Below, one piece after another: positions 1 to 54,644 of a stretch of DNA of 64,000 nucleotides. Both the position numbers and the translations under genes were made by a program. Below the pieces are notes generated by a model. That model made no database searches. It was not told the origin of the DNA and worked only from the letters and a program-made list of their open reading frames with translations. The stretch is from positions 930,001 to 994,000 of the forward strand of contig NW_025766237.1 in NCBI RefSeq assembly GCF_003918875.1, written 5' to 3'. Source of the DNA: Haliotis rubra (lineage: Eukaryota). Numbering within the stretch: position 1 is the first letter of the stretch; each line of letters begins with the position of its first letter.

Positions 1-1059
1 CTCTGTGTTATGATACGGAGACATTGTCATTGTGTGATGGTTATACCGTGTGTGGAGCTCTGACATTGTCTCTGTGTAATAATACGGAGACATTGTCTTT
101 GTGTGATGGTTACCTTGTGTGGAGCTCTGACATTGTCTTTGTGTGATGGTTATACCATGTGTGGAGCTCTGACATTGTGTCTGTGTAATGATACGGAGAC
201 ATTGTCTTTGTGTGATGGTTACCTTGTGTGGAGCTCTGACATTGTCTCTGTATGATGATACGGAGACATCGTCTTTGTGTGATGGTTATACCTTGTGTGG
301 AGCTCTGACATTGTCTCTGTGTAATTATACGGAGACATTGTCTTTGTGTGATGATTATACCTTGTGTGGAGCTCTGACATTGTGTCTGTGTTATGATACG
401 GAGACATTTTCATTGTGTGATGGTTATACCGTGTGTGGAGCTCTGACATTGTCTCTGTGTAATGATACGGAGACATTGTCTTTGTGTGATGGTTACCTTG
501 TGTGGAGCTCTGACATTGTCTCTGTATGATGATACGGAGACATCGTCTTTGTGTGATGGTTATACCTTGTGTGGAGCTCTGACATTGTCTCTGTGTAATT
601 ATACGGAGACATTGTCTTTGTGTGATGATTATACCTTGTGTGGAGCTCTGACATTGTCTCTGTGTTATGATACGGAGACGTTGTCAGTGTGTGATGGTTA
701 TACCGTGTCTGGAGCTCTGACATTGTCTGTGTGTAATGATACGGAGACATTGTCTTTGTGTGATGGTTATACCTTGTGTTGAGCTCTGACATTGTCTCTG
801 TGTAATTATACGGAGACATTGTCTTTGAGTGATGGTTATACCTTGTGTGTAGCTCTCACATTGTCTCTGTATGATGATACGGAGACACTGTGTGATGGTT
901 ACCTTGTGTGTAGCTCTCACATTGTCTCTGTATGATGATACGGAGACACTGTGTGATGGTTACCTTGTGTGTAGCTCTCACATTGTCTCTGTATGATGAT
1001 ACGGAGACACTGTATGATGGTTACCTTGTGTGTAGCTCTCACATTGTCTCTGTATGATG
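1..1059. repeat. 69-bp minisatellite array downstream of SQSTM1 copy A (truncated by window start)
   Basis: Tandem unit gagctctgacattgtctctgtgtaatgatacggagacattgtctttgtgtgatggttataccttgtgtg with 67-70 bp variants. It shortens to ~61-bp units near 850-1040. Confidence 0.97.
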
Positions 1060-2187
1060 AAGGTAATCACTGACTGCTAGACTGACACACATCTCACATT
1101 AAGAGTGTACTAACAAGGAGTTGGTTTTGGATGACTGAGAATGGGAACTGATCTGGGCCTAGTCCACTATATATTTTCAGAATGGTACTTTTACATGTGC
1201 AGGGTGGGAGATGTGGGTTGTTTGTTGATATTATTATTATTCCAGCAATATTATGGTGGGAGACACGAATCTACTACAGCTTTACTTCTGTACCCATGTC
1301 GAGAATAGAACTGACCTTGTGAACTTGTGTCATCACTTTACTAATATAGGCTAACCCATTCACTCACACAGGCGGTAATGTTATTAATACGTATACTTAA
1401 CTGAAATTGAAGTTCATACCAGGTCTGTATTGAAATGTGAGTAACGAACCACTGCATTCAACAACACAAATATTATTTGTGATAAGACAAATATTTATTG
1501 CATTTTATCAAAGTGAAAAACATAATGTCTGATGGTTATCGAGTACAAAACGGTTTCTATATACACATTATACAGGGTGTTACTCCATCTTCCATTTGTA
1601 CCAAAACAAAATAAGATCACTGACAGACATACAGATGTATTCTCTCCACTATTATATACAGAGATAGCAGATAGTCATGACATCAAGTCAAACCAGGTGA
1701 GCTTCATGTGCCTGGTTGTGACTAAAACACAACCTGTCTAGAACATATCCTGAACCTTCCCTACCAAGTCTGCATTCTCATCGCTTCCTGCATCTGTTCA
1801 GACCTTACTGACGACACAGATTTGTGAAGAGACGACAGAAATATTGAAAACATGTTTAACCACTCAAGGTAAAAATACACATCACTCATGCTTTGTGAAT
1901 CTGAATGATTAACTGAGTACAGTACAGTTCTGATTAATGAGGCTTTAGTGTAGTCCACTGACGGCAAGAAATCATAACATATCAGTAGGCAGTCACAGGT
2001 AGTTCTATATGTACAGCACTTGTGAGATTACATCACTATTAGGAATTAGGTATTCCTATCTATCACAAATATCACACTTTCAACAGTTCAAATCACACAC
2101 ATACTCCTATTAATCACTCATATCACTCTTACAACAGTTTATATCACACATGTATTCCCTTCTGTTGTGACCCTGCAGCCAATGCGT

Positions 2188-6797
<4,610 letters not shown>

Positions 6798-7507
6798 GAC
6801 AGCGGGTTTACTTTGGGAAATGCAGCGACGAAGTGTTGACGGCAGGCCTACACAGTAGTATTCAAGCAGACGATAAGGTGACAGTTGTTGTCAGTTGCGC
6901 TTCCGTGTGTTCAGCGTCGTATGGCGTTGTCAGCGGGATATATGCCCGCCTCACATCTACCCAGACTTTTATATAGACCAAGGCGCACTGACAATGTCAA
7001 AATTTATCAAAATTGCAAGTAACGCTGATTTAGATTTGTTCAAATGTTGGTTCACTACGCAGCTTCCGGCGGAACATAAACAAGATTTTCCTTTGTAATC
7101 GCTATAAATAGCTCCACCTAACAGTGAATCCTTCCCTGTGGATTGTAAAAGAACAGTCTAGATAAATTTCATCAGAAAATCAATTGAAATAAACGACTGA
7201 AGTAAACTGTTGGCTTATGTGTCATCCGGAAATACTGTTATTTATTTTACCGGAAACCTTTCATTGATAATGAACATCACGCGACAATTTCGTTTTACAA
7301 GTACTTAACGCGTACCTGTAACCAGAGACCGCATTCTTATTACACGGTCTCTGCTGTTCTACAGTGATTGTTTTATTATCCGACATTTTCCCATTTGATA
7401 AAACAGTTATGTGTATTTCAGAATACCACTCACCCCACCATCCAAAAGGAGACAGTTTATAAATTATGCCCTGGAATGGAATGATTTAAGGACTATGAGT
7501 GTTATGT

Positions 7508-7668
7508 NNNNNNNNNNNNNNNNNNNNNNNNNNNNNNNNNNNNNNNNNNNNNNNNNNNNNNNNNNNNNNNNNNNNNNNNNNNNNNNNNNNNNNNNNNNNN
7601 NNNNNNNNNNNNNNNNNNNNNNNNNNNNNNNNNNNNNNNNNNNNNNNNNNNNNNNNNNNNNNNNNNNN
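7508..7668. other. Assembly gap (161 N)
   Basis: Run of N between the two SQSTM1 units. Confidence 1.
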
Positions 7669-9366
7669 TTTTAGCAATGTTTTAGCAATATCACGGCGGG
7701 GAACACCAGAAATGGGCTTCACACATCGTACCCATGTGGGGAATGGAACCCGGGACTTAGGCGTGACCACTAGCTAGGCTACCCCACCGCTCCCTTGTTA
7801 TTATCTCCCTTGGACCACAGATTCCACTTCGGGTCTGATCAGATAACTCTGGATAGGTATAGGTTAAGGTGTAAGGTTATGGGGGATATATTTCTGTATG
7901 TCCTTGGAGGTGTTATGTCTCTGGGGTGTGGTACACGTAAGCATGGTGAAAACACCCGGTGTTTTTATTTGACTGTGCAGAACTGCGTTTCTCAGCGTGT
8001 CAGAATTATGTTTCCAATATCTACACGTTTCACCATTTGTAAAAGTCCGAGACGTGCATGTCCGAGACGCCATGTTATAACTAAGATACAATTCAAAGTG
8101 TCACTCTGAACTTACTCACTCACTCTGTTAACATCAAAATATATCCTCTTGTTGTTTCCGTCAGTTTCGGAGTTTTATGTAAATATCGGTGATATTTGAT
8201 TGATATATTTTGGCCTTGATTGGTTTTCAGCAGAACATGCTTGTCGTAAGAGGCGACTATCGGGTTCGGGCTACATGTCATCGTATCCCAATTGCATAGA
8301 TCGATGCTCATGCTGTTGATCACTGATTTACAGACCACCGTCATATCGTGGGAATGTTGCTGATTTAGGCGTTACACAACAAACAAACTAGTTATGGTTT
8401 GGATTCAAATGACTTAAAATAATACTGTTTGGTGAATGCATTATAATAAACAGGGACATATTCAATGGTTTGATCCCTGGATTGTCTGGCCCAGACTCGA
8501 TTGTTTACAGACCAAGTCTCACAGGTGAAATACGGCGAACTGCGGCCTGAATTGTACAGAGTTGCCAGAATATCCAGAATTGTACAATCGACTCGAGATT
8601 TCTTCCGGATGGTGAAAAAGTTTGGTCGATTGTTTCTTAACGAAAACTATAATATGGTTAATAATTATTATATGTGCATCACGTCATACTATGGGTGATC
8701 ATTCGATTTGTTGTTTATTGAAGACACGGGGGTTATCGATTATCCGGCGTATAATATACCATTAAAAACAGTCAAGGAGGAAAGAGATGATGAAGAGAAA
8801 TTAAGGGACAATGTGACAATTTATTCCATTCCTTTGGAAATGTTTCATCTCTCTCCATATATATTACTTTTTCTCATATGCATTGGCATTGGCTAGTGGT
8901 ATGCTCGCAAAATGGAATATCCCCTACTTTGTTTGAATGGTATGTTTCCATTACAATATGTAAAGAGTAATGGAATGGAGATAAAGGATGGTAATCTTTA
9001 TGCTCAGAGGGAAGAAATAAAACAATATGAGCGACGTTTGTGTAGCTACTAACACCGTTATTGATCAAGTGATGTACAATTATTGGGAGGAAGCCAGTGA
9101 TATGACAGACAGGAGAATAATGGGATTAAGATTGCTTGGTGATGAGTTGGTTGCAGGCAGTGGTAATGTAATACTTGTATATCCATAGAACACTCCTCGT
9201 TGTTCATCACACCAACATCTAAATGCCACTCAAACAAGTTAATCTTTAAGTACTCAAAAAGGCCAGTAGATGTTTAGGGAAGCTCGTTTTGATATTGCTG
9301 GCTGCCGTATCATCCCGGTACCTCAAGGGTCCAACCAGGAAGTCAGGATATCAACGTGTTGGAATA

Positions 9367-10960
9367 CTTTGTGTGATGGTTACCTTGTGTGGAGCTCTGA
9401 CATTGTTTCTGGTGTAATGATACGGAGACATTGTCTTTGTGTGATGGTTATACCTTGTGTGGAGCTCTGACATTGTCAATGTGTAATGATACGGAGACAT
9501 CGTCTCTGTGTGATGGTTACCTTGTGTGGAACCCTGACATTGTCTCTGTGTAATGATAGGGAGACATTGTCTTTGTGTGATGGTTACCTTGTGTGGAGCT
9601 CTGACATTGTCTCTGGGTAATGATACGGAGACATTGTCTTTGTGTGATGGTTATACCTTGTGTGGAGCTCTGACATTGTTTCTGGTGTAATGATACGGAG
9701 ACATTGTCTTTGTGTGATGGTTATACCTTGTGTGGAGCTGTGAAATTGTCTCTGTGTAATGATACGGAGACATTGTCTTTGTGTGATTGTTATACCTTGT
9801 GTGGAGCTCTGACATTGTGTCTGTGTAATGATACGGAGACATTGTCTTTGTGTGATGGTTATACCTTGTGTGGAGCTCTGACATTGTGTCTGTGTAATGA
9901 TACGGAGACATTGTCTTTGTGTGATGGTTACCTTGTGTGGAGCTCTGACATTGTCTCTGTGTAATGATACGTAGACATTGTCTTTGTGTGATGGTTATAC
10001 CTTGTGTGGAGCTGTGAAATTGTCTCTGTGTAATGATACGGAGACATTGTCTTTGTGTGATTGTTATACCTTGTGTGGAGCTCTGACATTGTGTCTGTGT
10101 AATGATACGGAGACATTGTCTTTGTGTGATGGTTATACCTTGTGTGGAGCTCTGACATTGTGTCTGTGTAATGATACGGAGACATTGTCTTTGTGTGATG
10201 GTTATACCTTGTGTGGAGCTCTTACATTGTGTCTGGCGTAATGATACGGAGACATTGTCTTTGTGTGATGGTTATACCTTGTGTGGAGCTCTGACATTGT
10301 GTCTGTGTAATGATACGGAGACATTGTCTTTGTGTGATGGTTATACCTTGTGTGGAGCTCTGACATTGTTTCTGGTGTAATGATACGGAGACATTGTCTT
10401 TGTGTGATGGTTATACCTTGTGTGGAGCTCTGACATTGTGTCTGTGTAATGATACGGAGACATTGTCTTTGTGTGATGGTTATACCTTGTGTGGAGCTCT
10501 GACATTGTCTCTGTGTAATGATACGTAGACATTGTCTTTGTGTGATGGTTATACCTTGTGTGGAGCTGTGAAATTGTCTCTGTGTAATGATACGGAGACA
10601 TTGTCTTTGTGTGATTGTTATACCTTGTGTGGAGCTCTGACATTGTGTCTGTGTAATGATACGGAGACATTGTCTTTGTGTGATGGTTATACCTTGTGTG
10701 GAGCTCTGACATTGTGTCTGTGTAATGATACGGAGACATTGTCTTTGTGTGATGGTTATACCTTGTGTGGAGCTCTTACATTGTGTCTGGCGTAATGATA
10801 CGGAGACATTGTCTTTGTGTGATGGTTATACCTTGTGTGGAGCTCTGACATTGTGTCTGTGTAATGATACGGAGACATTGTCTTTGTGTGATGGTTATAC
10901 CTTGTGTGGAGCTCTGACATTGTGTCTGTTTGATGATATGGAGACACTGGGTGATGAAGG
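9367..10960. repeat. 69-bp minisatellite array downstream of SQSTM1 copy B
   Basis: Same unit as 1-1059, ~23 copies. Ends in the same junction (gatgaaggtaatcactgactgctagact) as copy A. Confidence 0.97.
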
Positions 10961-11751
10961 TAATCACTGACTGCTAGACTGGCATACGTCTCACATTTAG
11001 AGTGTATTGACAAGGAGTTGGTTTTGGATGACTAACTGGGAATGGGAACTGATCTGGGCCTAGTCCACTATATATTTTCAGAATGCACTTTACTTCTGTA
11101 CCCATGTCGAGAATAGAACTGACCTTGTGAACTTAATTGTGTCATCAATAGGCTAACCCATTCACTCACACAGGCGGTAACGTCATTAATACGTATACTT
11201 AACTGAAATTGAAGTTCATACCAGGTCTGTATATAAATGTGAGTAACCAACCACTGCATTCAACAACACAAATATTATTTGTGATAAGACAAATATTTAT
11301 TGCATTTTATCAAAGTGAAAAATCTAATGTCTCATGGTTATCGAGTACAAAACGGTTTCTATATACAGATTATACAGGGTGTTACTCCATCTTCCATTTG
11401 TACCAAAACAAGATAAGATCACTGACAGACATGCAGCTGTATTCTCTCCACTATTATATACAGAGAGAGCAGAGAGTCATGACATCAAGTCAAACCAGGT
11501 GAGCTTCTTGTGTCTGAAACACAACCTGTCTAGAACATATCCTGAACTTCTCAATCAAGTCTGCATTCTCATCGCTTCCTGCATCTGTTCAAACCTTACT
11601 GACGACACTGATTTGTGAAGAGATGACAGAAATACTGAAAACATTTTTAACCACGTAAGGTAAAAATACACATCACTCATGCTTTGTGAATCCGTACAGC
11701 ACTTGTGAGATTGTACATCACTATTAGGAATTAGGTATTCCTATCTATAAA

Positions 11752-11940
11752 AAATATCACACTTTCAACAGTTCATATCCCATACATAACCTATATCAAT
11801 CAGGCATATCACACTTTCAGCAGTTCATATCCCATACATAACCTATATCAATCAGGCATATCACACTTTCAAGAGTTCATATCCCATACATAACCTATAT
11901 CAATCAGGCATATCACACTTTCAACAGTTTATATCACACA
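11752..11940. repeat. 52-bp tandem repeat (~3.5 copies) in copy B 3' UTR
   Basis: actttca..gttcatatcccatacataacctatatcaatcaggcatatcac recurs at 11761, 11813, 11865 and 11917. Copy A has only ~2 diverged units (2066-2150). Confidence 0.9.
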
Positions 11941-11977
11941 TGTATTTCCTTCTGTTGTGATCCTTCAGCCAATGAGT

Positions 11978-17065
<5,088 letters not shown>

Positions 17066-19682
17066 GACAGCGGGTTTACTTTGGGAAGTGCAGCGGCGAA
17101 GTGTTGACGGCAGGCGTACACAGTAGTATTCAAGCAGACGATAAGGTGACAGTTGTTGTCAGTTGCGCTTCCGTGTGTTCAGCGTCGTATGGCGTTGTCA
17201 GCGGGATATATGCCCGCCTCACATCTACCCAGACTTTTATATAGACCAAGGCGCACTGACAATGTCAAAATTTATCAAAATTGCAAGTAACGCTGATTTA
17301 GATTTGTTCAAATGTTGGTTCACTACGCAGCTTCCGGCGGAACATAAACAAGATTTTTGTTTGTAATCGCTATAAATAGCTCCACCTAACAGTGAATCCA
17401 TTCCTGTGGATTGTAAAAGAACAGTCTAGATGAATTTCATCAGAAAATCAATTACCCGTATTATACATTTCCAACATGTATTCATTTTACATTCAACATT
17501 AATTGATTGCACGTTTCCAACATTTATACATGATGCATTTCCAATATTTATTAATTTCATATTTAAACCTTCACTTCAAATAATATATATTTTCATTGGG
17601 TAAGGAATCGCATTTTTGTGTACGTGTCCTACAGATGTGTTTAGGTTCGAGTTGATGCGGGGCGTCAAAAAGTTGATTACAAGCCCTCCAAATCAGTTGA
17701 GACAAGATTGTCTAGTTCCCAGTGTAAGAACGATCATCTTGGATGAATGGAACATATCCTTGTGTATTCGAGCTGAATTCGACGTTCTGGTGATTTCGAC
17801 GATTGCATTGCACGCGTTATATCGGGGGAGTACGCGTGCGATCGGAGTGCACAAACAGTTTCACTGGTAGGGCGGGTGCCAAGTCGCTGTCGTGAGAAGT
17901 TTTATTGACAATGGAAATCGGGAAGTAAAGTTATGTAAAAAGCAAACAAACATCAATATTATTTACCCGAGATCGTTAATACCACTTACGATGCAAAATC
18001 AGTTCCCATTATAACAAAAAATATCAAGCGAAAATTCAGTTAGATCAGTCGTCTGCTGGTGACAGGCAACATATAAATAGGAAGCCACGTGATCACAACA
18101 CTCCCTTGCTGTGCGGAGCAAAAAGTATTGCTCATCGTCGAAAACCCATACAAAATACCCGGATGTTACCAGCGGCACAGTTTTGCCGATACGATTTCAT
18201 CAACGCTATTTTTGTAGGGAACACTTGATATTTTTGTGTGAAATAGATGAATATATCCTTTATCACTCGAGGTTAGTAAAATAAAAACTTTAGATGATAT
18301 TACAGATAAAAAATACGTTTTTGTCTTACATCGTCGAAAACCCCTGACACCGGGATAATATAGTCTCCCTGGCACAGTCAACTGAGGTCGGCTATGTGTA
18401 CGTTCATGATTTATGGCTTGGGGGTGATGGTAAGTTTTACGGAGAAGCATGTCCAAAATCAATGACCACGCCCTAGAACATGTGTACAAAATTGATGACC
18501 ACCCACCCCACTTAAAATCATTATACCCCACCTCCCCAACCCATATATTACATGAACGGTCCCTAATTGTGTACAAGTAAATATCGGCTTGGACAGACAA
18601 TGCCTGATAACCTAGTAAACAGTTTACTCAATGGTTTAACTTAAAATCACACAAAACACCCTTGTCAGAACATACACAAAGGGAGGTAATTGCGTCTGCT
18701 CAAGATCCTAACTCACAATCCTGTAACACAGGCCAATGTTTTGCTTCCATAGAGCCACGGTTGTTTTTTATATGTTTTTATATCTTAATCATTAACTGTC
18801 CCTTTTATGGTTTTGTGACGACCAGTTCTAACTCGGATGTTTCCTACTCACAGTTTTATGAAGAAATATTAACAGTCTATGGGTAATGTGGAGGATACGA
18901 ACCCTTCCATTATTTGAAGGAAATTTAATTTGCCACTAAAACGCCAAAAAATCCATATATATAAGAAGTCGCTTGTTAGTGAGTCAGTTGAGTTTTACGC
19001 CGCTTTTATTGACATTCCAGTAATATTATGAAATTACACCAAAAATGGGGTTCACACATTGTACACACAGGGAATCGAGCCGGGCATTCTGCGTCACGAA
19101 CGAACACTTTAACCACAAGGCCACCTGACCAATCTGTCTCACAGTCCCTGAACGTCATTATTTCCCATTCCGACCAGCCCTCCCTGCAATACTAAAGCTC
19201 TAAATGAAGCAAGTCTAGATTTCCTCAGGTTCTGAATCTCCCATATTACTGGTCTCGTTTTCATTTTAAAAGGAACTACATGTATTTGTTTCTATCAAAA
19301 TTATATTTATTCAGAGACTAAGCGTCTGTCTAGGACACTGGTCAGACAGACCTGTGACGACTGCTCCCGAGATCTCGAGCTTTGCTAACCTTTACCCAAC
19401 AACTAGGAGAAAGTAGCTTTAAAACTGTATGCCCATGGTACAATAACTCTGTCTTTAAAATGGCCACATCTGTATCAGAACGGGTTAGTGGCTACTGTTT
19501 ATGGAGGCGACATGTGATGTTTCTAAATAGTTATAAATTCCTCTGATTTTAAACACTTATAGTTAATGTATGTGTGCCGAGTTAAATTTAACCAGTCGTG
19601 ATATCCCAGCCCTTTAAACATGTGCATAAATTCATAAACAGTATGTCGTATACCCCATTATACCACAAAATATTAACCATAA

Positions 19683-20070
19683 GGCCACACTTTTTTATTA
19701 CTTTGTTTACGGATTCTTTACAGCAATATTCCTGTCGGTAGGTGGTAAGAAAAAAAAGTCTGTTTCCGATTTTTTCTTGATGGCAGTCAAAAGAAAGAGT
19801 AACCTCCCTTTACCTATCGTTTTGTTTCAGCATTTTCACTTAGTAACGTCAATTCGACGATTTTATTTGTTTCAATATTTGAAATTTTGTTTTGCAACGA
19901 TGCCAAATTCGTAAGAGAAAGTCGATTTCAATAAAGCGGATTTTAAAATCATTTATTTGGATTTTATTTAACGGCGGTATTTCAAAAATGGAAAATTTGA
20001 TTTTTTTTCCCACTTTAGCAAAAGTTGCGGTCTGTGGATCTGTAAACCAAGTAATAAAACAAGTGTGTCC
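19683..20070. mobile_element. PIF/Harbinger-like MITE
   Basis: Imperfect TIRs ggccacac..ttattactttgtttacggat / atctgtaaaccaagtaataa..gtgtgtcc, flanked by TAA on both sides. Confidence 0.7.
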
Positions 20071-24703: not shown

Positions 24704-27700
24704 ACAACAACTTCAGCAACTGCAGGCACAGACTGTACAGATACAGCCACAAGTGCAAATACAAACTCAGCCACAGGTGCAAATACAAACTCAGCCACAG
24801 GTGCAACAGCGCTCTCCTCAGCAGCAGCTGAAACTGATTTTGCAACAGCCTTTGGTTACGACGACGACAACCCAGGCTCAGCCTCGTACCCAGGTGCAAC
24901 AGTTAATACAACAAGCAGTGTCTTTGCAGTCTGCAGCACCGGCTGCAGCCCCAGCTCCGACACCGGCACCTGCACCCACACCAGTACAGCAGACGACAAC
25001 AAATGTCAGTCAGCTTAGTTTGCAGCAACTACAACAGGTTTGATATGCCCCCTCCTTCATATGTCAGTCTTTGTGTTGAACGACATTGAACCAATGAAAG
25101 CACAAAATCAACTTACTTTTAAGATATTTGTTCTCAAACATATCAAACAAGATTGGAGTCTCTGAGACAACTTTGTTTTTGCTTAAAACCATATGTAATT
25201 ATATTAATGCAGAACATTTTGATTTGGTTCGATATCATTTTTGATGTACAAAAAATCGAACATATTTTCAAAAGGTCAGCATACATGTAAGCTAATTGCA
25301 AGTTTAGTAAGAAACATATTTCCTGGTTTGTAATATTACAAGTGGGTATGCTGATTAAATGAAACACCGAGAACAAGAATGGATGGTTTCTACGGTAGTC
25401 TATGTTAACGCTCATCACGGACCACGCATGCATTTGTTTCACTATTCCAACTACTGCGCGTACCCCCTTGTATTACAAACCAATAATAGCGATTTGAAAC
25501 TATGATGGCAAGGTAAAATCATGAGGATTCACAATCTTAATTTCACTTTATGTGATTTACTTTTTGGTTTAAATTGAATTTCATCGGTACGTTTTCACTG
25601 CAAACAGACTATAGTTGTTGTTCAGTAATGTTGTTAACCATGGTAATAATGAAAGTATTACTTATATTATTTCACCTCACTCATATGAAATATTTGTGTC
25701 TTTTCCAAAGTTGTTCACGTCGGCCTTTTCTGTTTTAGTTGCTGCTTCAGTCCCAAGTTTTGAAGACCACCACTGTGAGTGAACCAACACCAACTGTTGT
25801 GTCAATTTCTTCTCCAGTCACTACAGTCAATAATGCGAACACTACTGTTAGCAGTGTGACATCATCACCGGTGCAGACAATTGTTGCTGGGGGCAACACC
25901 ATACTCACGAGTATTCCTATCCAAGTTGTAGATGGTGACAAGGTACCCATCAACAGACTCAATACCATGCCCAAAAAAGCACACAAAGGGGAAAAACGCA
26001 CAGCACACAATGCCATTGAGAAACGTTACAGGCTCAGTATCAATGACAAGATTGTGGAGTTAAAAGATCTTGTAGCAGGAACAGAAGCAAAGGTAAGGCA
26101 AATTGAGATGCAGAATTTCCTTGTACTCTGGTGAACATTGCTGTGATCCGTGTGTCTCACGACATCTCTGCAGGATTTACATAGATGTTAAAACGAGTCC
26201 GATAACTCAAAGTAAAAATGTTTTTGGGAGTCTTTTTCTATGTATGGGAGTCTTGAAAATATTTTGTTAAATGATTCCATTATTCATTCTAAAACAAGTA
26301 AAGCGAGGGTTGGGATCTTGTGATATTTTCTTTCCTGGATCATCTTGGCATGGTTAGTAAGTAGTAGAAGATCAAAGACTTTGTATAAGAAATGGTTAAA
26401 CTTGAAGTCAGTACTTGATTTTCAAGTATTGTAATTTGCAGTCCAAATTGCATTTATGACTTACTTATTCCAAGAACTAATATCTGATGAAGAACTGAAA
26501 TGCATCTTCAGAACTTGGAATTCAAGGTAGTTCCTTGAATTCCAAGTTCTGAAAAGTTCTGTTCCTATTAATGACCACTAGATGCCAACTTGGCAGTGTT
26601 GTCTGATTACATGATGCATCAATGTGAAATGTCTGTTGTAATATTACTTTGACCTCAGATTTTCAATTGTTTGTATGGTTTCTTTGCTTCAGCTGAACAA
26701 ATCTGCAATTTTACGGAAAGCGATCGATTACATCAGATATCTGCAAAACAGCAACAACCGCCTGAAACAGGAGAATATGGCTCTCAGGATGGCAACCAGC
26801 AAGCAAAGTAAGGAGTTCACTGAATATTACCAACTAAAGTTGCATGGGTTCATTTTGGAAGGTTATTCTTAACTGACTCAGGGGTGGAAATAACTTTAAA
26901 ATTGCTAGTGTACACCGGTACAGTGGCACATGTAACATCACTTGCCCTGATAATTTTTCCACTATACTGGCCGTTTTCTTGTTGATTTTTTAAATAAACA
27001 ATATAATAAACATTGGAAAGTCAACTGGACACCGGTACAGTGTAATATACAAATTTGCTTGCCCGACAGAAAAAAACACTGGACTCGGACGTCGGGCAAT
27101 GGGTTATTTCCACCCCTTTGACTAGGTCCTATTACCATGATTACCTATATTTTTGTTGTTTCAGATCTGGAGGAGTTACTGACATGTAAAAAGGAAGCAG
27201 GTGCATTCCCAATGACACCTCCAGTGTCTGACAACTCAGAGCCTGATAGTCCTCTCTCCAATGACAGTATGATGGGTAAGGGATTTGAAATTCAGTGTGA
27301 ATATGATTATCATGAAACGATAATATGTATGGTCATGTTTTTGTGATTGATGCCAGAATCCCTATTCTTTGATTGTTGGTATTATCACTTGACTTAAGAC
27401 ATGATAGGACAGACTTGAATGGTGCTTTTCTGTAGGGTCAATATTTGATGGTTTTTCTTTTATTTTGCAGATGATTCTGGTGATGAAGAGGATAGTCAGT
27501 TTGATATCACAAGTGGTATGCTGGATCGATCTCGTATGGTCCTGTGTGTGTTCATGCTTGGTATTCTGGCATTCAACCCATTCAATTCAATACTTGGTGG
27601 TAGCAGTAAAGTCGGTATGGAGGCACAAGTCGGGCTTGGACATGGAGCTAGTAGACATCTCAATTCGCTTGGAAACTTCTCACAAGAAGCCACCAGTGAG

Positions 27701-49900: not shown

Positions 49901-52900
49901 TGAAGCTATGAGACTTGGAGTCACTGATGATATAGAGGTCGTTGTCAATCTCAGGCCCTCAGAAAACAGTTCCATGCAGTGTAGAGGAAATTTCCTTGCA
50001 TTAAACGCCGGTGTATGACCTTGGTGTCTAGTAGCATTCACGAATGCTGATTGAGGTTCGACGAAACCTGAAATATCGGTTTTATTGGCAGGATCGCCTA
50101 TCGATTCCATTGGCGTAGATTGACTGACAGGTTGTATTTCTGTTGAGCACTGTTGTTGTTTCATGCTAAAACCACTTGTGTAACATTAGCCACAAAATCC
50201 TGGTCTAATGGTAGTGTAGTATTACCCAGAGGGTTTGCGAATGCTTGTGATTTAGTCATATTACTCCATTGATGACATTGAGTGGATGCGTTCGCCATTC
50301 GCAGATGTATTCTCTCTCTGAGCTAGTAGAGATAAAGTTGATTCATTACTAGTCGACTGGTTCGCAATAGTAGAACAAGTTGACTGAGGTGACACCGGTT
50401 GATCGTTAACTGAAGAGTTTTACAAACTCTGATGTTGTAGACGACGATCTACGTTGAGACAAGTGTTTTCATGATTGTTTCTGTTATGATGATCTGCTGT
50501 TTGAGAACCGGGGATGATCAATATAATGTCGTCAAAGCATTCTCGAATGATGTAACTACATTTGTAGACTTTGTTGATCTGGCTGAATGATGTGATGTAG
50601 ATTTTGACGTTGATGCCTTCCTTGATGACGTAGACAATCTCTTTTTCTTAACTAACCTCTGCAGCTCAATTTCTTCCCTAAAAGGGGACTTCATCTTAGG
50701 GCAAGGTGTGTAGCTGTCTCTGTAACAGCGACAGAGACAAGAGAAACCACGGAAGGAATCTCCAAAGATTGCACCAACAACTCACACTCTGATGCTTGAT
50801 AGGCACCCATATCAGCAGCTGCCCTGCTATCACGTTTCTTTGTCTCCATTAGCTTGTGTAAACGTGCTAAGAAATAATTATTAAATTGAAATGATGATTA
50901 TGAGCGTGATATTTACATCGTGATACTAAAGAGCATGAATGAATGGTACAGAAAGAACACACAGGGTGTGGATCAACCGCTGAAAATCATAGCCTGCATT
51001 GTTGACACGCCATCATATGTAAACAGTTACCTGCAATCGAGTGTAAAACACAACAGTTAGTTAAAATTTTCGCCTAAATGTTAACATTGTGAAGATAATA
51101 TATACAGCTTAAATACAATTCACAGCCTTAATTTGGATAAAGAGGCCGAAATATAAAGGATATTAGCTGCAACAGAGACCCATAACGACTGTCCAATCGT
51201 CTGCTTGGGCGATGAAGGAGAGAGTGATGAGAGCTAGGCTGAGGTCACCTGGAACCGTTTGGGCAGGAAAGGGGAGGCTACTCGTGGGTGAGAGATATTA
51301 CGATCGCTTCAGGGAATTGAAAGGGATTCAGGTTTCCACTTAACCATCAAAAGGAGAAGGGAGATAAGCAATAAGCATGAGTCGGGATACGGAAAAACTA
51401 GATTTTTTTTCTGATTATGATTCTGGCTCATCTGGGACATTACATCTTCCTCATGGACGTCACCAAGGACGTAAACATCTTGCCTGCCATGGTCACTTGT
51501 TTTGAATCCTAGATAAATCTCTCATGAAAAACAAATTAAACATATTTAACAGAACAACGGTAAATAAAACAAGTGTAGAAGTGAGCAAAGCTCACATACC
51601 CCCGCTTCCCACTTTGGGACATGGAAATGACTGATATTGATATATAAATGTGACAAGGATCAGCAGCTCACAAGACTTTCTCCTTGACTCTACTAAACTT
51701 TATATACAAGTTAGATAATTGTTTTGCCATGTACTGATTACAGTAATAATTTATGGAAACATTACTTTTTTTGTGTTTTCCGTGGAAACCTGACATACAA
51801 TTGAACTTGTTGCACACAATGAAGTGGACGTAGATGAAGATTGTTATTTTTTAGCACATGGCATATCTGTTGGTCATGATTAACTTGTGTATTATGTTTG
51901 GTGAACCTAGCATGTATAGTTTTGATGATATGCTGTGGCCAGGTAACCATCAAACACATTTTGCACCAAGTCATGTTTCCATGGAAACAACAACAAAACA
52001 AGTTCTGAAAAACATTAAAAAAAATTAAAATAGCAAAAGGCACATCAATGGGTAAATATTAACATGTGTGTGAAGTTTGGTGAACCTAGCATGTAAACTT
52101 TAAGAGATATGCTCCGGACAAAACCATCAAACACATTTGGCACTAAGTCGTGTTTCCATGGAGACAGCAAAAAAAACAATATTCTGAAAAGGCACATCAA
52201 TGGGTAATGATTAACATGTGTGTGAAGTTTGGTGAACCTAGCATGTAAACTTTAAGAGATATGCTCCGGACAAAAAACACCAAACACATTTGGCACTAAG
52301 TCGTGTTTCCATGGAAACAGCAAAAAAACAAAATTCTGGAAAAAAATAAAAATAGCAAAAGGCACATCAATCAACTTTAAGAGATATGCTCCAAACAAAG
52401 TTTCGGGACGGACGGACGGACAGACAGACAGAATGAACGCTATATACCCCCGTTACTTCGTAGCGGGGGTATAATAAGTTACTATTAACAAGATAAAAAT
52501 AAAACACATCAGTTAAAGATATATAAGGGATTTTTATCCACTGAACTGGTATACATATGATAAATGCTACTGTGACAAAGCAAATAACAATGTACCTTAT
52601 AGAATGGCACCATTCCTTCATGTGGAAACTCTTTGGTTGCCGAGATGAGATGGACAAACTTGCTGCGCATCCCTTCTTTATAAAGCTGCTCTGCTACAAT
52701 GCGACTAACATAGTTCTTCCCAGTGCCTGTCCAGCCATGGAAGGAAAGAACAAGCGCCTTGGCAGGCTCAGCAGACTTGATGTGTCCACGGATGTGATTG
52801 GTCACAGCTTTCAGAACAAGGTGTTGGCCATACAGCTTCTCATTAAGCTGCTTTGGGAGACCTGAAGTATGGATTATTTGAATGAAATGGATGTTTACCA

Positions 52901-54644
52901 GTATTTGAGTTGCAAACGCTGCTGCTGTATCCTCATCGTCATTTCGTGAAGGCCTCCAGTGTCATTTTATGCCACTATGCACTCTGTGTCTGATACCATT
53001 TGTGACATGTAAAGTATTGTTTGTTTGTTGTTTAAGAAACTTTAACACATCATTTGGCGAATTCCAGCTATATAATGATGGCTTGTAGTGAGTGAGTCAA
53101 CCAAATTTCAGCCATATTGTGACGAGTGGTGCTCTGTAAACAATTAAGCCTTGTCCAGATAAATCAGTGACTGACATCATGAGCACCGACCTACACAATA
53201 TGGATGACATGCATCAACAAAGACGACAAGACTGATCAGCCTGAGCCCCATTTCACAAAGCGATTGTAGTGTTAAAGTGATTGTAACTCCCATACTTTAA
53301 CATAGACTTACAAAAGTCGTAGTGCTATGATCGCTTTGTGAAACAGGCCCCTGATTATGGCACTATAGAAGTGAATGCATTTTTAAAGGGGGATTTACGG
53401 TAATCTTGGTTAATATCACCTTGCAGAGACTGCTGCCCTTGTTACATTCTTTTCCTTTCATATAGTACTATGACCAGTTTAGTGACAATATATATCTTGA
53501 TTGAGGTATAAGTTTGAAGTCTACAGCCGTCATCATGGTCATACTATGTAAGACCAGAGACCATATATCTATTATATGGTCTCTGGTAAGACAAGTTACT
53601 GTTGTACAAATGACTTCTTTACACTCAATCACAGACAGTGTTGGCTTGCAAACTTGAAACATATCTTTCATAGGACAGGCATGCCGATTCACAATCGAGT
53701 AGCAAACAAATGCACCACAAATGACATAAATAAGGGTTAGAGCCAATTGAATACCACTTCATATCCTGCTGAAAACTAGCCTAACAAGGCTGCTCATAAG
53801 TCATATCTCTATCTGCAGGTTTGGGAAACCTACCAATCGGCCTATAATAGGCCGAACAGGATATTATAGGCCGTTCTGCCTATTTTGCTATAGGCCGATC
53901 CGGCTATATTTGAACATTTTTCTCATTATTTCACAAACTATCAACTTCCACACGAAATGGTTTTATATGATCATAGAGATGAATATTTAATGAACCTCCT
54001 CAGCTTGAAAAACATAAGTTTTTGGACAAAATGGAAATTTATATCATGTTCAGGAAAAGATGTTTCATTAAGAACACAATTTTGCATAGATTTTCCTTTT
54101 GAAAACAAACACTGAATATCTATGTCATTAATTTGCACTGAAAATTGTCAAAAAATATTATAGATTTATATTTCATTAGCAATTTCCAAACTTCTTTATT
54201 ATGTGATGAAAATTCTCAAAAAGGGTTTGAATGAAAACCTTAGGACATCAAACCTTGAATGATGTTAATATCCTCATGCGGAAATGCACCGCTTCAAATT
54301 TATTTGATAAATATCATAATTATAACCTGATCTGAGTTGCACATAATAAAAATATAAATTGTGTAAAGGGTGTGACAACAGATGTAACGGGTATAAAGGC
54401 CAAGGTCAAGTGTGACTGTCTAGAGTAAAGCATCCTCGCCAGTACCTGTGTGGTTGTTGACTATCCAGCGGTCTCCACAGGTTTCAGTAACATAACTCTT
54501 CAAGACATCGAACCCAGAAATGACGGCCGCGGCTACTACTGCAGCGGCAGCGGAAATGCCGGAGATTGGCTCAATACACACAGCCAAATGCAGAAAGCAT
54601 GTACTACTGAGAAAAAATCCCGTAAACAGTACACAGCCTCGCAT
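43935..54644 (-). CDS. TOR1A: Torsin-1-like ER/nuclear-envelope AAA+ ATPase (5 exons)
   Basis: Exons 54644-54446, 52861-52596, 46317-46142, 45198-45074, 44188-43935. Signal peptide plus hydrophobic segment, LYGQHL, non-canonical Walker A GWTGTGKN, Walker B FIFDEMDK, sensor-1 FLSN, sensor-2 GCK, and the conserved EE pair (VIEELSFW). Confidence 0.93.
45276..45628 (-). mobile_element. tRNA-derived SINE family B (~350 bp)
   Basis: Reverse complement of 59405-59751, with A/B boxes and a (cctca)n tail. Confidence 0.9.
46534..51397 (-). mobile_element. Decayed DIRS-type retrotransposon in Torsin intron 2
   Basis: ~200-bp ITRs (46570-46745 vs 51220-51397) and ICR at 46816-46900. RT N-terminus at ~49220-48930 (YWENW..VL*VLREGYEI; PGFYSPIF). 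YR at ~48560-47660 (WDLN, QKTLFLLTLATAARMSEI, CPVRAL, HEVRALAS, WRSDSVFANHCLRD). The central RT/RNase H region is missing. Confidence 0.92.
47139..47597. repeat. 43-bp tandem array (~10.5 near-perfect units) inside DIRS element 2
   Basis: Unit ccataagttaaggcaaggactattaccgaaactgaatcacaac. Confidence 0.97.
51568..52474 (+). mobile_element. HINE-like element with internal ~150-bp tandem core
   Basis: aacaag start with subterminal tacccccg, ~3-4 core repeats (gtgaacctagcatgta), (ggac)n(agac)n, and a 3' hairpin tacccccg..cgggggtataa. This layout is described for molluscan Helentron-associated elements. Confidence 0.75.

What the first reader, a model, noticed from the sequence alone, without database searches (positions are those of the whole stretch)
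1..17453. Two intact, diverged tandem p62/SQSTM1 genes, each with its own minisatellite and private TE insertions
Seen: a unit made of the minisatellite, 3' flank, 6 exons and ~390 bp upstream occurs twice. Both copies keep open frames and splice sites. They differ by amino-acid substitutions, indels and reciprocal insertions (3669-4120 only in A; 12227-13134 only in B). The upstream homology stops abruptly at aatcaatt (7187 vs 17453). Known: p62 is usually single-copy in animals and polymerises through PB1, so paralogs with identical PB1 domains could co-assemble. Inference: this is either a real recent tandem duplication or two alleles of a heterozygous genome placed in tandem across the N gap.
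Basis: partly seen in the sequence, partly recalled or inferred. Interest (0 to 1): 0.7.

Follow-up and report, generated by a model that had tools for sequence, protein, structure and literature searches.

The report
Tandem p62 gene array in abalone
The two p62/SQSTM1 autophagy-receptor genes are real, intact neighbours, and they are the last two units of a longer head-to-tail array in the blacklip abalone genome that public annotation already lists as separate genes; this is an ordinary lineage-specific gene-family expansion, and an assembly artefact looks unlikely.

Summary
Window 1-7185 and 9367-17453 are two copies, 92-96% identical, of one unit: a 69-bp minisatellite, a six-exon p62/SQSTM1 gene on the minus strand, and about 390 bp of upstream DNA. 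Both genes are intact (393 and 403 aa).

The window is Haliotis rubra scaffold C1347:930001-994000. Just upstream lie a third intact copy (Y, 388 aa), a rearranged copy (Z) and an older diverged copy (W). The order is W-Z-Y-A-B.

- **The gap.** The Y-to-A junction has no gap. The two flanks of the 161-N gap lie 46-49 bp apart, in the same order and orientation, in both gap-free paralogous spacers.
- **The array end.** Y and A run on into spacer DNA, whereas B runs into unique DNA.
- **No allele-like pair.** Private differences are Y 76, A 138, B 138.
- **Selection.** Exons differ by about 2%, introns by 2-9%, and dN/dS is 0.27-0.46.
- **Annotation.** RefSeq already lists A, B and Y as three "sequestosome-1-like" genes.
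- **Relatives.** H. asinina has two genes of the same subfamily.

My estimate is about 80-85% for real paralogs. Interest is modest.

The parts
1..1060 (.). 69-bp minisatellite of unit A (right-hand part; the array starts at genome 928265, left of the window, and is about 2.8 kb in all)
   Evidence: TRF period 69, 13.9 copies inside the window. Self-BLAST places the array at 928265-931060. The repeat occurs at only three places in the whole genome, the Y, A and B units.
2188..6797 (-). p62/SQSTM1 gene A, 393 aa. Exons: 6797-6623, 5866-5771, 4741-4521, 3544-3307, 3090-2779, 2327-2188.
   Evidence: Exon model with AG/GT sites. It is an exact match to XP_046569068.1. Pfam finds PB1 at 1.2e-10, ZZ at 6.7e-14 and UBA_5 at 1.4e-16. 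The best PDB hits for each domain are Sequestosome-1.
3669..4122 (.). Dispersed-repeat insertion private to A, in intron 3
   Evidence: B and Y have the empty site. There are at least 158 matches on many scaffolds, the best 99% identical.
7186..7507 (.). Start of the inter-unit spacer A->B, left of the gap. The unit boundary is at 7185|7186.
   Evidence: It matches the Y->A spacer at 925406-925652 and 926234-926308, and the Z->Y spacer at 914312-915231.
7508..7668 (.). 161-N run in the intergenic spacer
   Evidence: Its flanks map 46-49 bp apart, in the same order and strand, in the gap-free Y->A and Z->Y spacers.
7669..9366 (.). Inter-unit spacer A->B, right of the gap
   Evidence: 92.5% identical to the Y->A spacer at 926361-927698, and 91-96% identical to the Z->Y spacer.
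9367..10946 (.). 69-bp minisatellite of unit B (22.9 copies)
   Evidence: TRF; locus-specific.
11978..17065 (-). p62/SQSTM1 gene B, 403 aa. Exons: 17065-16891, 16154-16059, 15023-14803, 14265-14028, 13809-13468, 12117-11978.
   Evidence: Exon model. It is an exact match to XP_046569066.1. Pfam finds PB1, ZZ and UBA_5. It has five GVNPQ repeats against three in A, and four amino-acid changes in the ZZ exon.
12230..13144 (.). Dispersed-repeat insertion private to B, in intron 5 (about 752-bp element, 1.2 units)
   Evidence: A and Y have the empty site. There are at least 105 matches that are 90-97% identical, and some form tandem runs elsewhere.
17066..17453 (-). Conserved 388-bp upstream region of gene B. 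The array ends at 17453.
   Evidence: 97.4-97.9% identical to the same stretch of Y and A. Beyond ...AAAATCAATT, B continues into unrelated DNA.

Best explanation
A and B are two neighbouring, functional members of a tandem array of p62/SQSTM1 paralogs in the blacklip abalone (Haliotis rubra). The array reads W-Z-Y-A-B on one scaffold. Its young part (Y, A, B) consists of units of about 10-12 kb. Each unit holds a spacer, a locus-private 69-bp minisatellite, a six-exon gene and a 390-bp promoter-proximal region. I infer that the units arose by unequal crossing-over and then exchanged segments by gene conversion, which would explain the mosaic similarity between them. All three young genes keep the parts that make p62 work. 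These are a PB1 domain with both its basic surface (K8, R22/R23) and its acidic surface (D59/D61/D63), the zinc ligands of the ZZ finger, a W-T-L-L LIR-like motif, and the UBA domain. They evolve under purifying selection. I therefore infer that they are ubiquitin-binding selective-autophagy receptors. Because their PB1 domains are identical or nearly so, they could join the same filaments. They differ mainly in a GVNPQ repeat (2, 3 or 5 copies) and in a few residues of the ZZ and UBA exons. The N run sits in an intergenic spacer and breaks neither gene. Shown here: the anatomy, the intactness, the array structure, the selection signal and the subfamily relationship. Inferred: the origin mechanism, expression, co-assembly and receptor function.
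For: - **Duplication and array.**
- **Y->A junction.** There is no N in genome 880-955 kb except 937508-937668.
- **Gap flanks.** They are colinear with two gap-free spacers, 46-49 bp apart.
- **Unit boundary.** Y, A and B share it. Y, A and Z continue into spacer, B into unique DNA.
- **Site patterns.** Over about 5,300 aligned sites, private differences are Y 76, A 138 and B 138. Blocks occur where Y is close to A and others where Y is close to B; in intron 3, Y-B differ by 1.7% against 8.1% and 8.7% for the other pairs.
- **Contested versus certain paralogs.** The contested spacer pair (YA against AB, 92.5% identity) is about as diverged as the certainly paralogous pairs that involve the Z->Y spacer (91-92%).
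- **Heterozygosity.** The published k-mer estimate for this genome is only 1.27-1.44%, and the main animal was inbred (PMC6774278).
- **No leftover copies.** No further near-identical copies occur on other scaffolds.
- **Intact models.** They are identical to RefSeq XP_046569066, 68 and 69.
- **Selection.** dS is about 0.04 and dN/dS is 0.27-0.46, with binomial p of 0.011, 0.011 and 0.061. Exons differ by about 2% and introns by 2-9%.
- **Domains and key residues.**
- **Independent assembly.** The chromosome-level H. asinina assembly has two genes of the same subfamily with consecutive accession numbers on one chromosome.
- **Phylogeny.** The subfamily is sister to canonical Haliotis p62.
Against: - Depth, spanning reads and segregation remain untested.
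- **Assembly method.** The assembly merges Nanopore and Illumina data from two animals with QuickMerge. Haplotigs were purged only at the scaffold level, and this procedure can add or drop a unit inside a tandem array.
- **The 161-N run is unexplained.** The published RNA-guided joins add exactly 100 N each (29,200 bp for 292 joins).
- **No expression evidence.** No transcript-derived fragment of these genes was found in the protein collection.
- **Weak selection test for A-B.** The pairwise tests are not independent, and A-B alone reaches only p = 0.06.
- **Youth.** With dS near 0.04 the copies are young enough that their intactness could partly reflect age.
Confidence: 0.75

Rival explanations
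1. Assembly artefact. The true locus has fewer young copies, and one of Y, A or B is the other haplotype (or the other animal's version) of a neighbouring unit, laid in tandem by the long-read assembler, by QuickMerge or across the N run.
For: The assembly used two animals. The pre-purge assembly was heavily duplicated (1.91 Gb against 1.38 Gb), and purging removes only whole scaffolds. An N run of unexplained origin lies exactly between A and B. Some segments differ by only about 1-2% between Y and A or between Y and B, which is near allelic level.
Against: No pair is consistently closest; private differences are 76, 138 and 138. A and B have different downstream flanks. The Y->A junction has no gap. 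The gap flanks are colinear with two independent gap-free spacers. The contested spacers are as diverged (7.5%) as the certainly paralogous ones (8-9%), which is about five times the genome-wide heterozygosity. Each unit has its own TE insertion, its own minisatellite length with array-specific repeat variants, and its own GVNPQ repeat number. H. asinina also has at least two genes of this subfamily.
Confidence: 0.13
2. The array is real, but the extra copies are redundant and effectively neutral. They look intact only because they are young and are repeatedly overwritten by gene conversion from one functional copy. They add nothing beyond dosage, and some may be silent.
For: dS is only about 0.04. 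There are just 19-25 coding differences per pair. The mosaic similarity blocks point to conversion. The neighbour Z has lost the ZZ exon and is rearranged, which shows that copies in this array do decay. No transcript evidence was found.
Against: Nonsynonymous changes are under-represented in two of three pairs (p about 0.011). All splice sites and frames are kept in three copies despite 2-9% intron divergence and private TE insertions. The 390-bp promoter-proximal region is 97-98% conserved, more than most introns. RefSeq models all three as protein-coding.
Confidence: 0.15

Closest known systems
p62/SQSTM1 (sequestosome-1; Ref(2)P in Drosophila), the metazoan selective-autophagy receptor
   Same: The architecture is the same: PB1, ZZ, a LIR-like motif and UBA_5, with no FW or coiled-coil domain. 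The best solved-structure matches for all three domains are Sequestosome-1. Residues conserved with vertebrate p62 include the PB1 basic K and RR, the acidic DxDGD...FSSDEEL motif, the ZZ Cys/His ligands, the 'GIxVDxDxEH' block and the UBA 'MGF..GGWL' motif.
   Different: Identity to vertebrate p62 is only about 39%. No ETGE/STGE-type KEAP1-binding motif was seen. The proteins carry lineage-specific GVNPQ and GETTPQE repeats. The genes are present as several tandem copies.
Canonical Haliotis p62 (H. rufescens XP_046372018, H. cracherodii XP_071086994, H. asinina XP_067663942, H. rubra XP_046553396 on scaffold C2700)
   Same: The domain order and the exon logic are the same. It is the sister clade of the array-type genes in the tree (support 83/93).
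   Different: Identity to the array-type genes is only 48-54%. It has a Gly/His/Arg-rich insert that the array type lacks. It lies on another scaffold. The stem branch of the array type is twice as long (0.52 against 0.26).
H. asinina sequestosome-1-like genes XP_067663574 and its isoform X2 (P0001; accession not returned), and XP_067663576/578
   Same: They belong to the same subfamily, at 84-90% identity. There are at least two genes on one chromosome, with consecutive accession numbers. One of them carries the same internal exon-4/5 module duplication that is amplified six-fold in H. rubra copy Z.
   Different: The copies group by species rather than by position. This means either independent duplications or concerted evolution.
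Multiple p62-like genes in other molluscs (Mya arenaria x3 on one chromosome; Sinanodonta woodiana ACJMK2_010693/010698/010699; Solemya velum x2)
   Same: These are lineage-specific multiplications of p62. Some have neighbouring locus tags, which suggests tandem arrangement.
   Different: They are independent events at 35-46% identity. I did not examine them further.

Membership tests
p62/SQSTM1 | N-terminal PB1 domain with both the basic surface (K7, R21/R22 in human) and the acidic OPCA surface (D69/D71/D73), which allows head-to-tail polymerisation | tested here: met
   Pfam finds PB1 at E 1.2e-10 to 2.1e-10 in A, B and Y. K8, R22/R23, D59/D61/D63 and FSSDEEL are invariant in the alignment with mammalian and alligator p62. 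Polymerisation itself was not tested.
p62/SQSTM1 | ZZ-type zinc finger after PB1 | tested here: met
   Pfam finds ZZ at E 5e-13 to 7e-14. The Cys/His ligands are invariant. The best PDB hits are p62 ZZ structures 6miu and 6mj7.
p62/SQSTM1 | LIR motif (acidic/Ser run followed by W-x-x-L) that binds Atg8/LC3 | tested here: inconclusive
   The sequence [12 protein letters not shown] is present in A, B and Y, at the position expected before the UBA domain. MAFFT did not align it with the vertebrate DDDWTHL, and binding cannot be tested here.
p62/SQSTM1 | C-terminal UBA domain of the p62 type | tested here: met
   Pfam finds UBA_5 at E 1e-16 to 5e-15. PDB 2rru and 1q02 p62 UBA structures match residues 342-392.
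p62/SQSTM1 | Absence of the FW (NBR1) and coiled-coil domains that define the paralog NBR1 (PMC9582228) | tested here: met
   Only PB1, ZZ and UBA_5 are found at E <= 0.001. The criterion was read.
Tandem gene array formed by unequal crossing-over | Head-to-tail units that share one end-to-start junction, with the last unit running into unique flank | tested here: met
   The junction ...AAAATCAATT|GAAATAAAC... occurs in Y and A (and in Z with one change). B diverges at the same base. Three spacers are colinear.
Tandem gene array formed by unequal crossing-over | Physical reality of every unit in one haplotype (depth, spanning reads) | not testable with these tools

The most novel reading that the evidence does not exclude
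Abalones carry a second, fast-evolving p62 lineage that is kept as a concertedly evolving tandem array. In H. rubra it may have become the main ubiquitin-binding receptor, because both canonical p62 copies on scaffold C2700 carry different 2-bp insertions in the UBA exon that remove the last UBA helices. Under this reading the array would be an adaptive, possibly immunity- or stress-driven, diversification of a polymerising autophagy receptor, with mixed filaments built from variant subunits.
Probability: 0.1. Interest if true: 0.6.

Novelty: new member of a known kind. Interest (0 to 1): 0.3.

Why it matters
p62 works as a polymer, so several near-identical paralogs with the same PB1 surface could form mixed filaments. 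Their cargo-binding parts (ZZ, the repeat region, UBA) differ slightly, which gives a natural system for asking how paralog mixing tunes a polymerising receptor. It also shows that the single-copy expectation for p62 fails in molluscs, where stress and immune gene families often expand. For the scan, the practical point is that the N run does not mark a false haplotype join. The genes are already in RefSeq, however, and tandem duplication is commonplace, so the finding is of modest interest unless the canonical-gene frameshift proves real.

Tried and rejected
- **Transcript fragments.** A word search with exon 5 of A found only one 119-aa Logan fragment from another species, 75% identical and reading through into the intron. 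That gives no expression evidence.
- **Earlier notes of this scan.** Nothing was found for this place or for these words.
- **Literature.** Searches for sequestosome with abalone, tandem duplication or paralogs found no description of this array.
- **Rejected: the gap as an RNA-guided scaffold join.** The published joins add exactly 100 N each, and no gene spans the gap.
- **Rejected: "B is an allele of A".** The downstream flanks differ and A and B are not sister sequences.
- **Rejected: "homology merely interrupted by a TE upstream of B".** Only scattered repeat fragments of about 50-150 bp recur 1.5-4 kb further on, and they are not colinear.
- **Spliced model.** I did not type or send any joined exon model to a search tool. 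Exons were searched by reference, and the full-length proteins used were those returned by the database (P0005, P0124, P0125). dN/dS was summed exon by exon over interior codons, skipping split codons.
Full report
**What is there.**
A BLASTN comparison of window 1-7507 with 7669-20000 shows one colinear duplicated unit. It starts with a 69-bp minisatellite at 1-1060 and at 9367-10946. After that, 1280-7185 matches 11088-17453 at 92-96% identity.

The match is interrupted by a 454-bp insertion found only in copy A (3669-4122) and a 915-bp insertion found only in copy B (12230-13144). Both insertions are dispersed repeats, with at least 158 and at least 105 matches on many scaffolds. The only N run is 7508-7668.

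**The genes.**
Open frames on the minus strand carry PB1, ZZ and UBA_5 signatures. I placed six exons per copy with canonical AG/GT sites; intron 3 is phase 0 and the other introns are phase 1.

- Copy A exons: 6797-6623, 5866-5771, 4741-4521, 3544-3307, 3090-2779, 2327-2188 (393 aa).
- Copy B exons: 17065-16891, 16154-16059, 15023-14803, 14265-14028, 13809-13468, 12117-11978 (403 aa).

I sent no joined exon model to any search tool. A search with exon 5 alone returned a full-length relative. A word search with that relative and a cluster look-up then returned RefSeq proteins named "sequestosome-1-like [Haliotis rubra]". Every one of my exon translations is an exact substring of XP_046569068.1 (A), XP_046569066.1 (B) or XP_046569069.1 (a third copy, Y).

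On the full proteins Pfam finds PB1, ZZ and UBA_5 and nothing else. The best solved-structure matches for each domain are Sequestosome-1. An alignment with mammalian and alligator p62 shows these residues to be invariant: the PB1 basic residues (K8, R22/R23), the acidic DxDGD...FSSDEEL surface, the ZZ ligands and the UBA MGF/GGWL motif. A LIR-like motif, [12 protein letters not shown], precedes the UBA domain. By the criteria of PMC9582228, which are a polymerising PB1 domain and no FW or coiled-coil domain, these are p62 and not NBR1.

**Which genome.**
The window is G000:C1347:930001-994000. G000 has 1,378,282,171 bases in 2,855 records. The published blacklip abalone assembly has 1,378,265,264 bp in 2,854 scaffolds (PMC6774278). 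The RefSeq proteins above lie on a contig of 1,515,414 bp, which is the length of C1347. The genome is therefore Haliotis rubra.

Exon searches of the whole genome and analysis of fetched flanks show five p62 genes head to tail on C1347. All are on the minus strand.

| Copy | Genome position on C1347 | State |
|---|---|---|
| W | 894483-899919 | 44-69% amino-acid identity to A, by exon |
| Z | 906617-911988 | No ZZ exon; a 454-bp module that fuses parts of exons 4 and 5 is repeated six times |
| Y | 920667-925019 | Intact, 388 aa |
| A | window 2188-6797 | Intact, 393 aa |
| B | window 11978-17065 | Intact, 403 aa |

Scaffold C2700 carries the canonical abalone p62 (XP_046553396), which groups with the p62 of H. 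rufescens, H. cracherodii and H. asinina, and a degraded second copy. The 69-bp minisatellite occurs nowhere else in the genome except in units Y, A and B.

**The gap.**
The N run lies in the intergenic spacer, 711 bp upstream of A's start codon, so the question of reading frame does not arise.

Two paralogous spacers, Z->Y and Y->A, contain no N. In both, the sequence that ends at 7507 and the sequence that starts at 7669 lie in the same order and orientation, 49 and 46 bp apart. The letters on the two sides are therefore consistent with continuity.

The origin of the run is unexplained. The published RNA-guided joins add exactly 100 N each (29,200 bp for 292 joins), which does not match 161.

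**Real duplication or haplotype artefact.**
The sequence itself argues against the artefact in six ways.

1. Y and A are joined without any gap.
2. Y, A and B share the unit boundary ...AAAATCAATT. Y, A and Z then continue into spacer DNA, whereas B continues into unrelated DNA. A and B thus have different downstream flanks, which alleles should not have, and A's flank predicts a further unit to its right.
3. Over about 5,300 aligned sites the private differences are Y 76, A 138 and B 138. If two of the three were alleles, the third should carry most of the differences. A and B are in fact the most distant pair.
4. The contested spacers (YA against AB, 92.5% identity) are about as diverged as the pairs that involve the Z->Y spacer (91-92%), which must be paralogous. 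The published heterozygosity is 1.27-1.44% in an inbred animal.
5. Each unit has its own TE insertion, GVNPQ repeat number and minisatellite length, and its minisatellite carries array-specific repeat variants.
6. The independent chromosome-level assembly of H. asinina also has two genes of this subfamily on one chromosome, with consecutive accession numbers.

Three points weigh against. The assembly merged two assemblies from two animals, and haplotigs were purged only as whole scaffolds, so the copy number could be off by one. Some blocks differ by only 1-2% between Y and A or between Y and B. Nothing at read level was seen. I put real paralogy of A and B at about 80-85%.

**Evolution.**
Exons differ by 1.7-2.2% and introns by 1.7-8.7%. 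dS is 0.036-0.043 and dN/dS is 0.27, 0.38 and 0.46. Nonsynonymous changes are fewer than neutral expectation, with p = 0.011, 0.011 and 0.061.

Similarity is mosaic. Around window 5227-4736, Y is close to A. In intron 3, Y is close to B (1.7% against 8.1% and 8.7% for the other pairs). I read this as gene conversion or unequal exchange among the units, which is an inference.

In a protein tree the array-type genes of H. rubra and H. asinina form a clade (100/100). That clade is sister to canonical Haliotis p62 (83/93) and has a long stem. Within it the copies group by species. This means either separate duplications or concerted evolution. The shared exon-4/5 module architecture of H. rubra Z and H. 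asinina gene 1 favours an old array that has been homogenised.

**How it most likely works.**
Shown: three intact genes that keep the PB1 surfaces needed for polymerisation, the ZZ domain, the LIR-like motif and the UBA domain. Their promoter-proximal 390 bp is 97-98% conserved.

Inferred: all three are expressed selective-autophagy receptors. Their PB1 domains are identical in A and B and differ by one substitution in Y, so they could enter the same filaments. That would raise dosage and add small variation in cargo-facing parts. B has four changes in the ZZ exon and five GVNPQ repeats. Y has two changes in the UBA domain.

**Novelty.**
The genes are already annotated, and several other molluscs have multiple p62-like genes. 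I found no paper that describes the abalone array. This is a new member of a known kind and of modest interest.

Noticed in passing
G000:C2700:1312243-1316905 and 1290462-1300746 (loci L006-L009): This is the canonical abalone p62 (XP_046553396, 431 aa) and a degraded second copy. Each carries a different 2-bp insertion within about 15 bp of the other in the UBA exon, just after or within GGWLTRLL. As a result the RefSeq protein loses the last UBA helices that H. asinina, H. rufescens and H. cracherodii keep. This may be a real loss or a polishing error in a duplicated region.
   Followed up: partly
G000:C1347:906617-911988 (loci L003-L004), copy Z: This p62 copy has no ZZ exon. A 454-bp module that fuses the 5' part of exon 5 with the 3' part of exon 4 is repeated six times at 97-99% identity (907346-910050). 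One extra copy of the same module is present in H. asinina XP_067663574.
   Followed up: partly
window 12230-13144, and e.g. G000:C59:272032-274946: The B-private insertion belongs to a young, abundant element of about 752 bp. Its copies are 96-97% identical, and 2,676 first-look candidates were found. It inserts as 1.2 units here and forms head-to-tail runs elsewhere, which resembles a rolling-circle or satellite-forming element.
   Followed up: no
window 13468-13809 / RefSeq XP_046569067.1: RefSeq gives gene B a second isoform (393 aa) that lacks exactly two GVNPQ repeats (30 nt). This may reflect transcripts of A or Y, or a shorter B allele of the second animal, aligned to B rather than true splicing.
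   Followed up: no
window 7669-7767 and genome 926113-926212, 927780-927878, 915281-915379, 913234-913303: A repeat of about 100 bp abuts the right edge of the N run and recurs in both orientations in the paralogous spacers. It could explain why this spot was left unresolved.
   Followed up: no
window 25739-26131 (+) and 52512-52961 (-): These are neighbouring genes. Another exon belongs to torsin (E 1.6e-34). Both would be useful single-copy depth controls.
   Followed up: no
protein P0002 (Logan contig, 1,206 nt): This is a 119-aa fragment, 75% identical to exon 5, that reads through into the intron. It comes from an unnamed sequencing run and suggests that the array-type p62 exists in at least one further species.
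   Followed up: no
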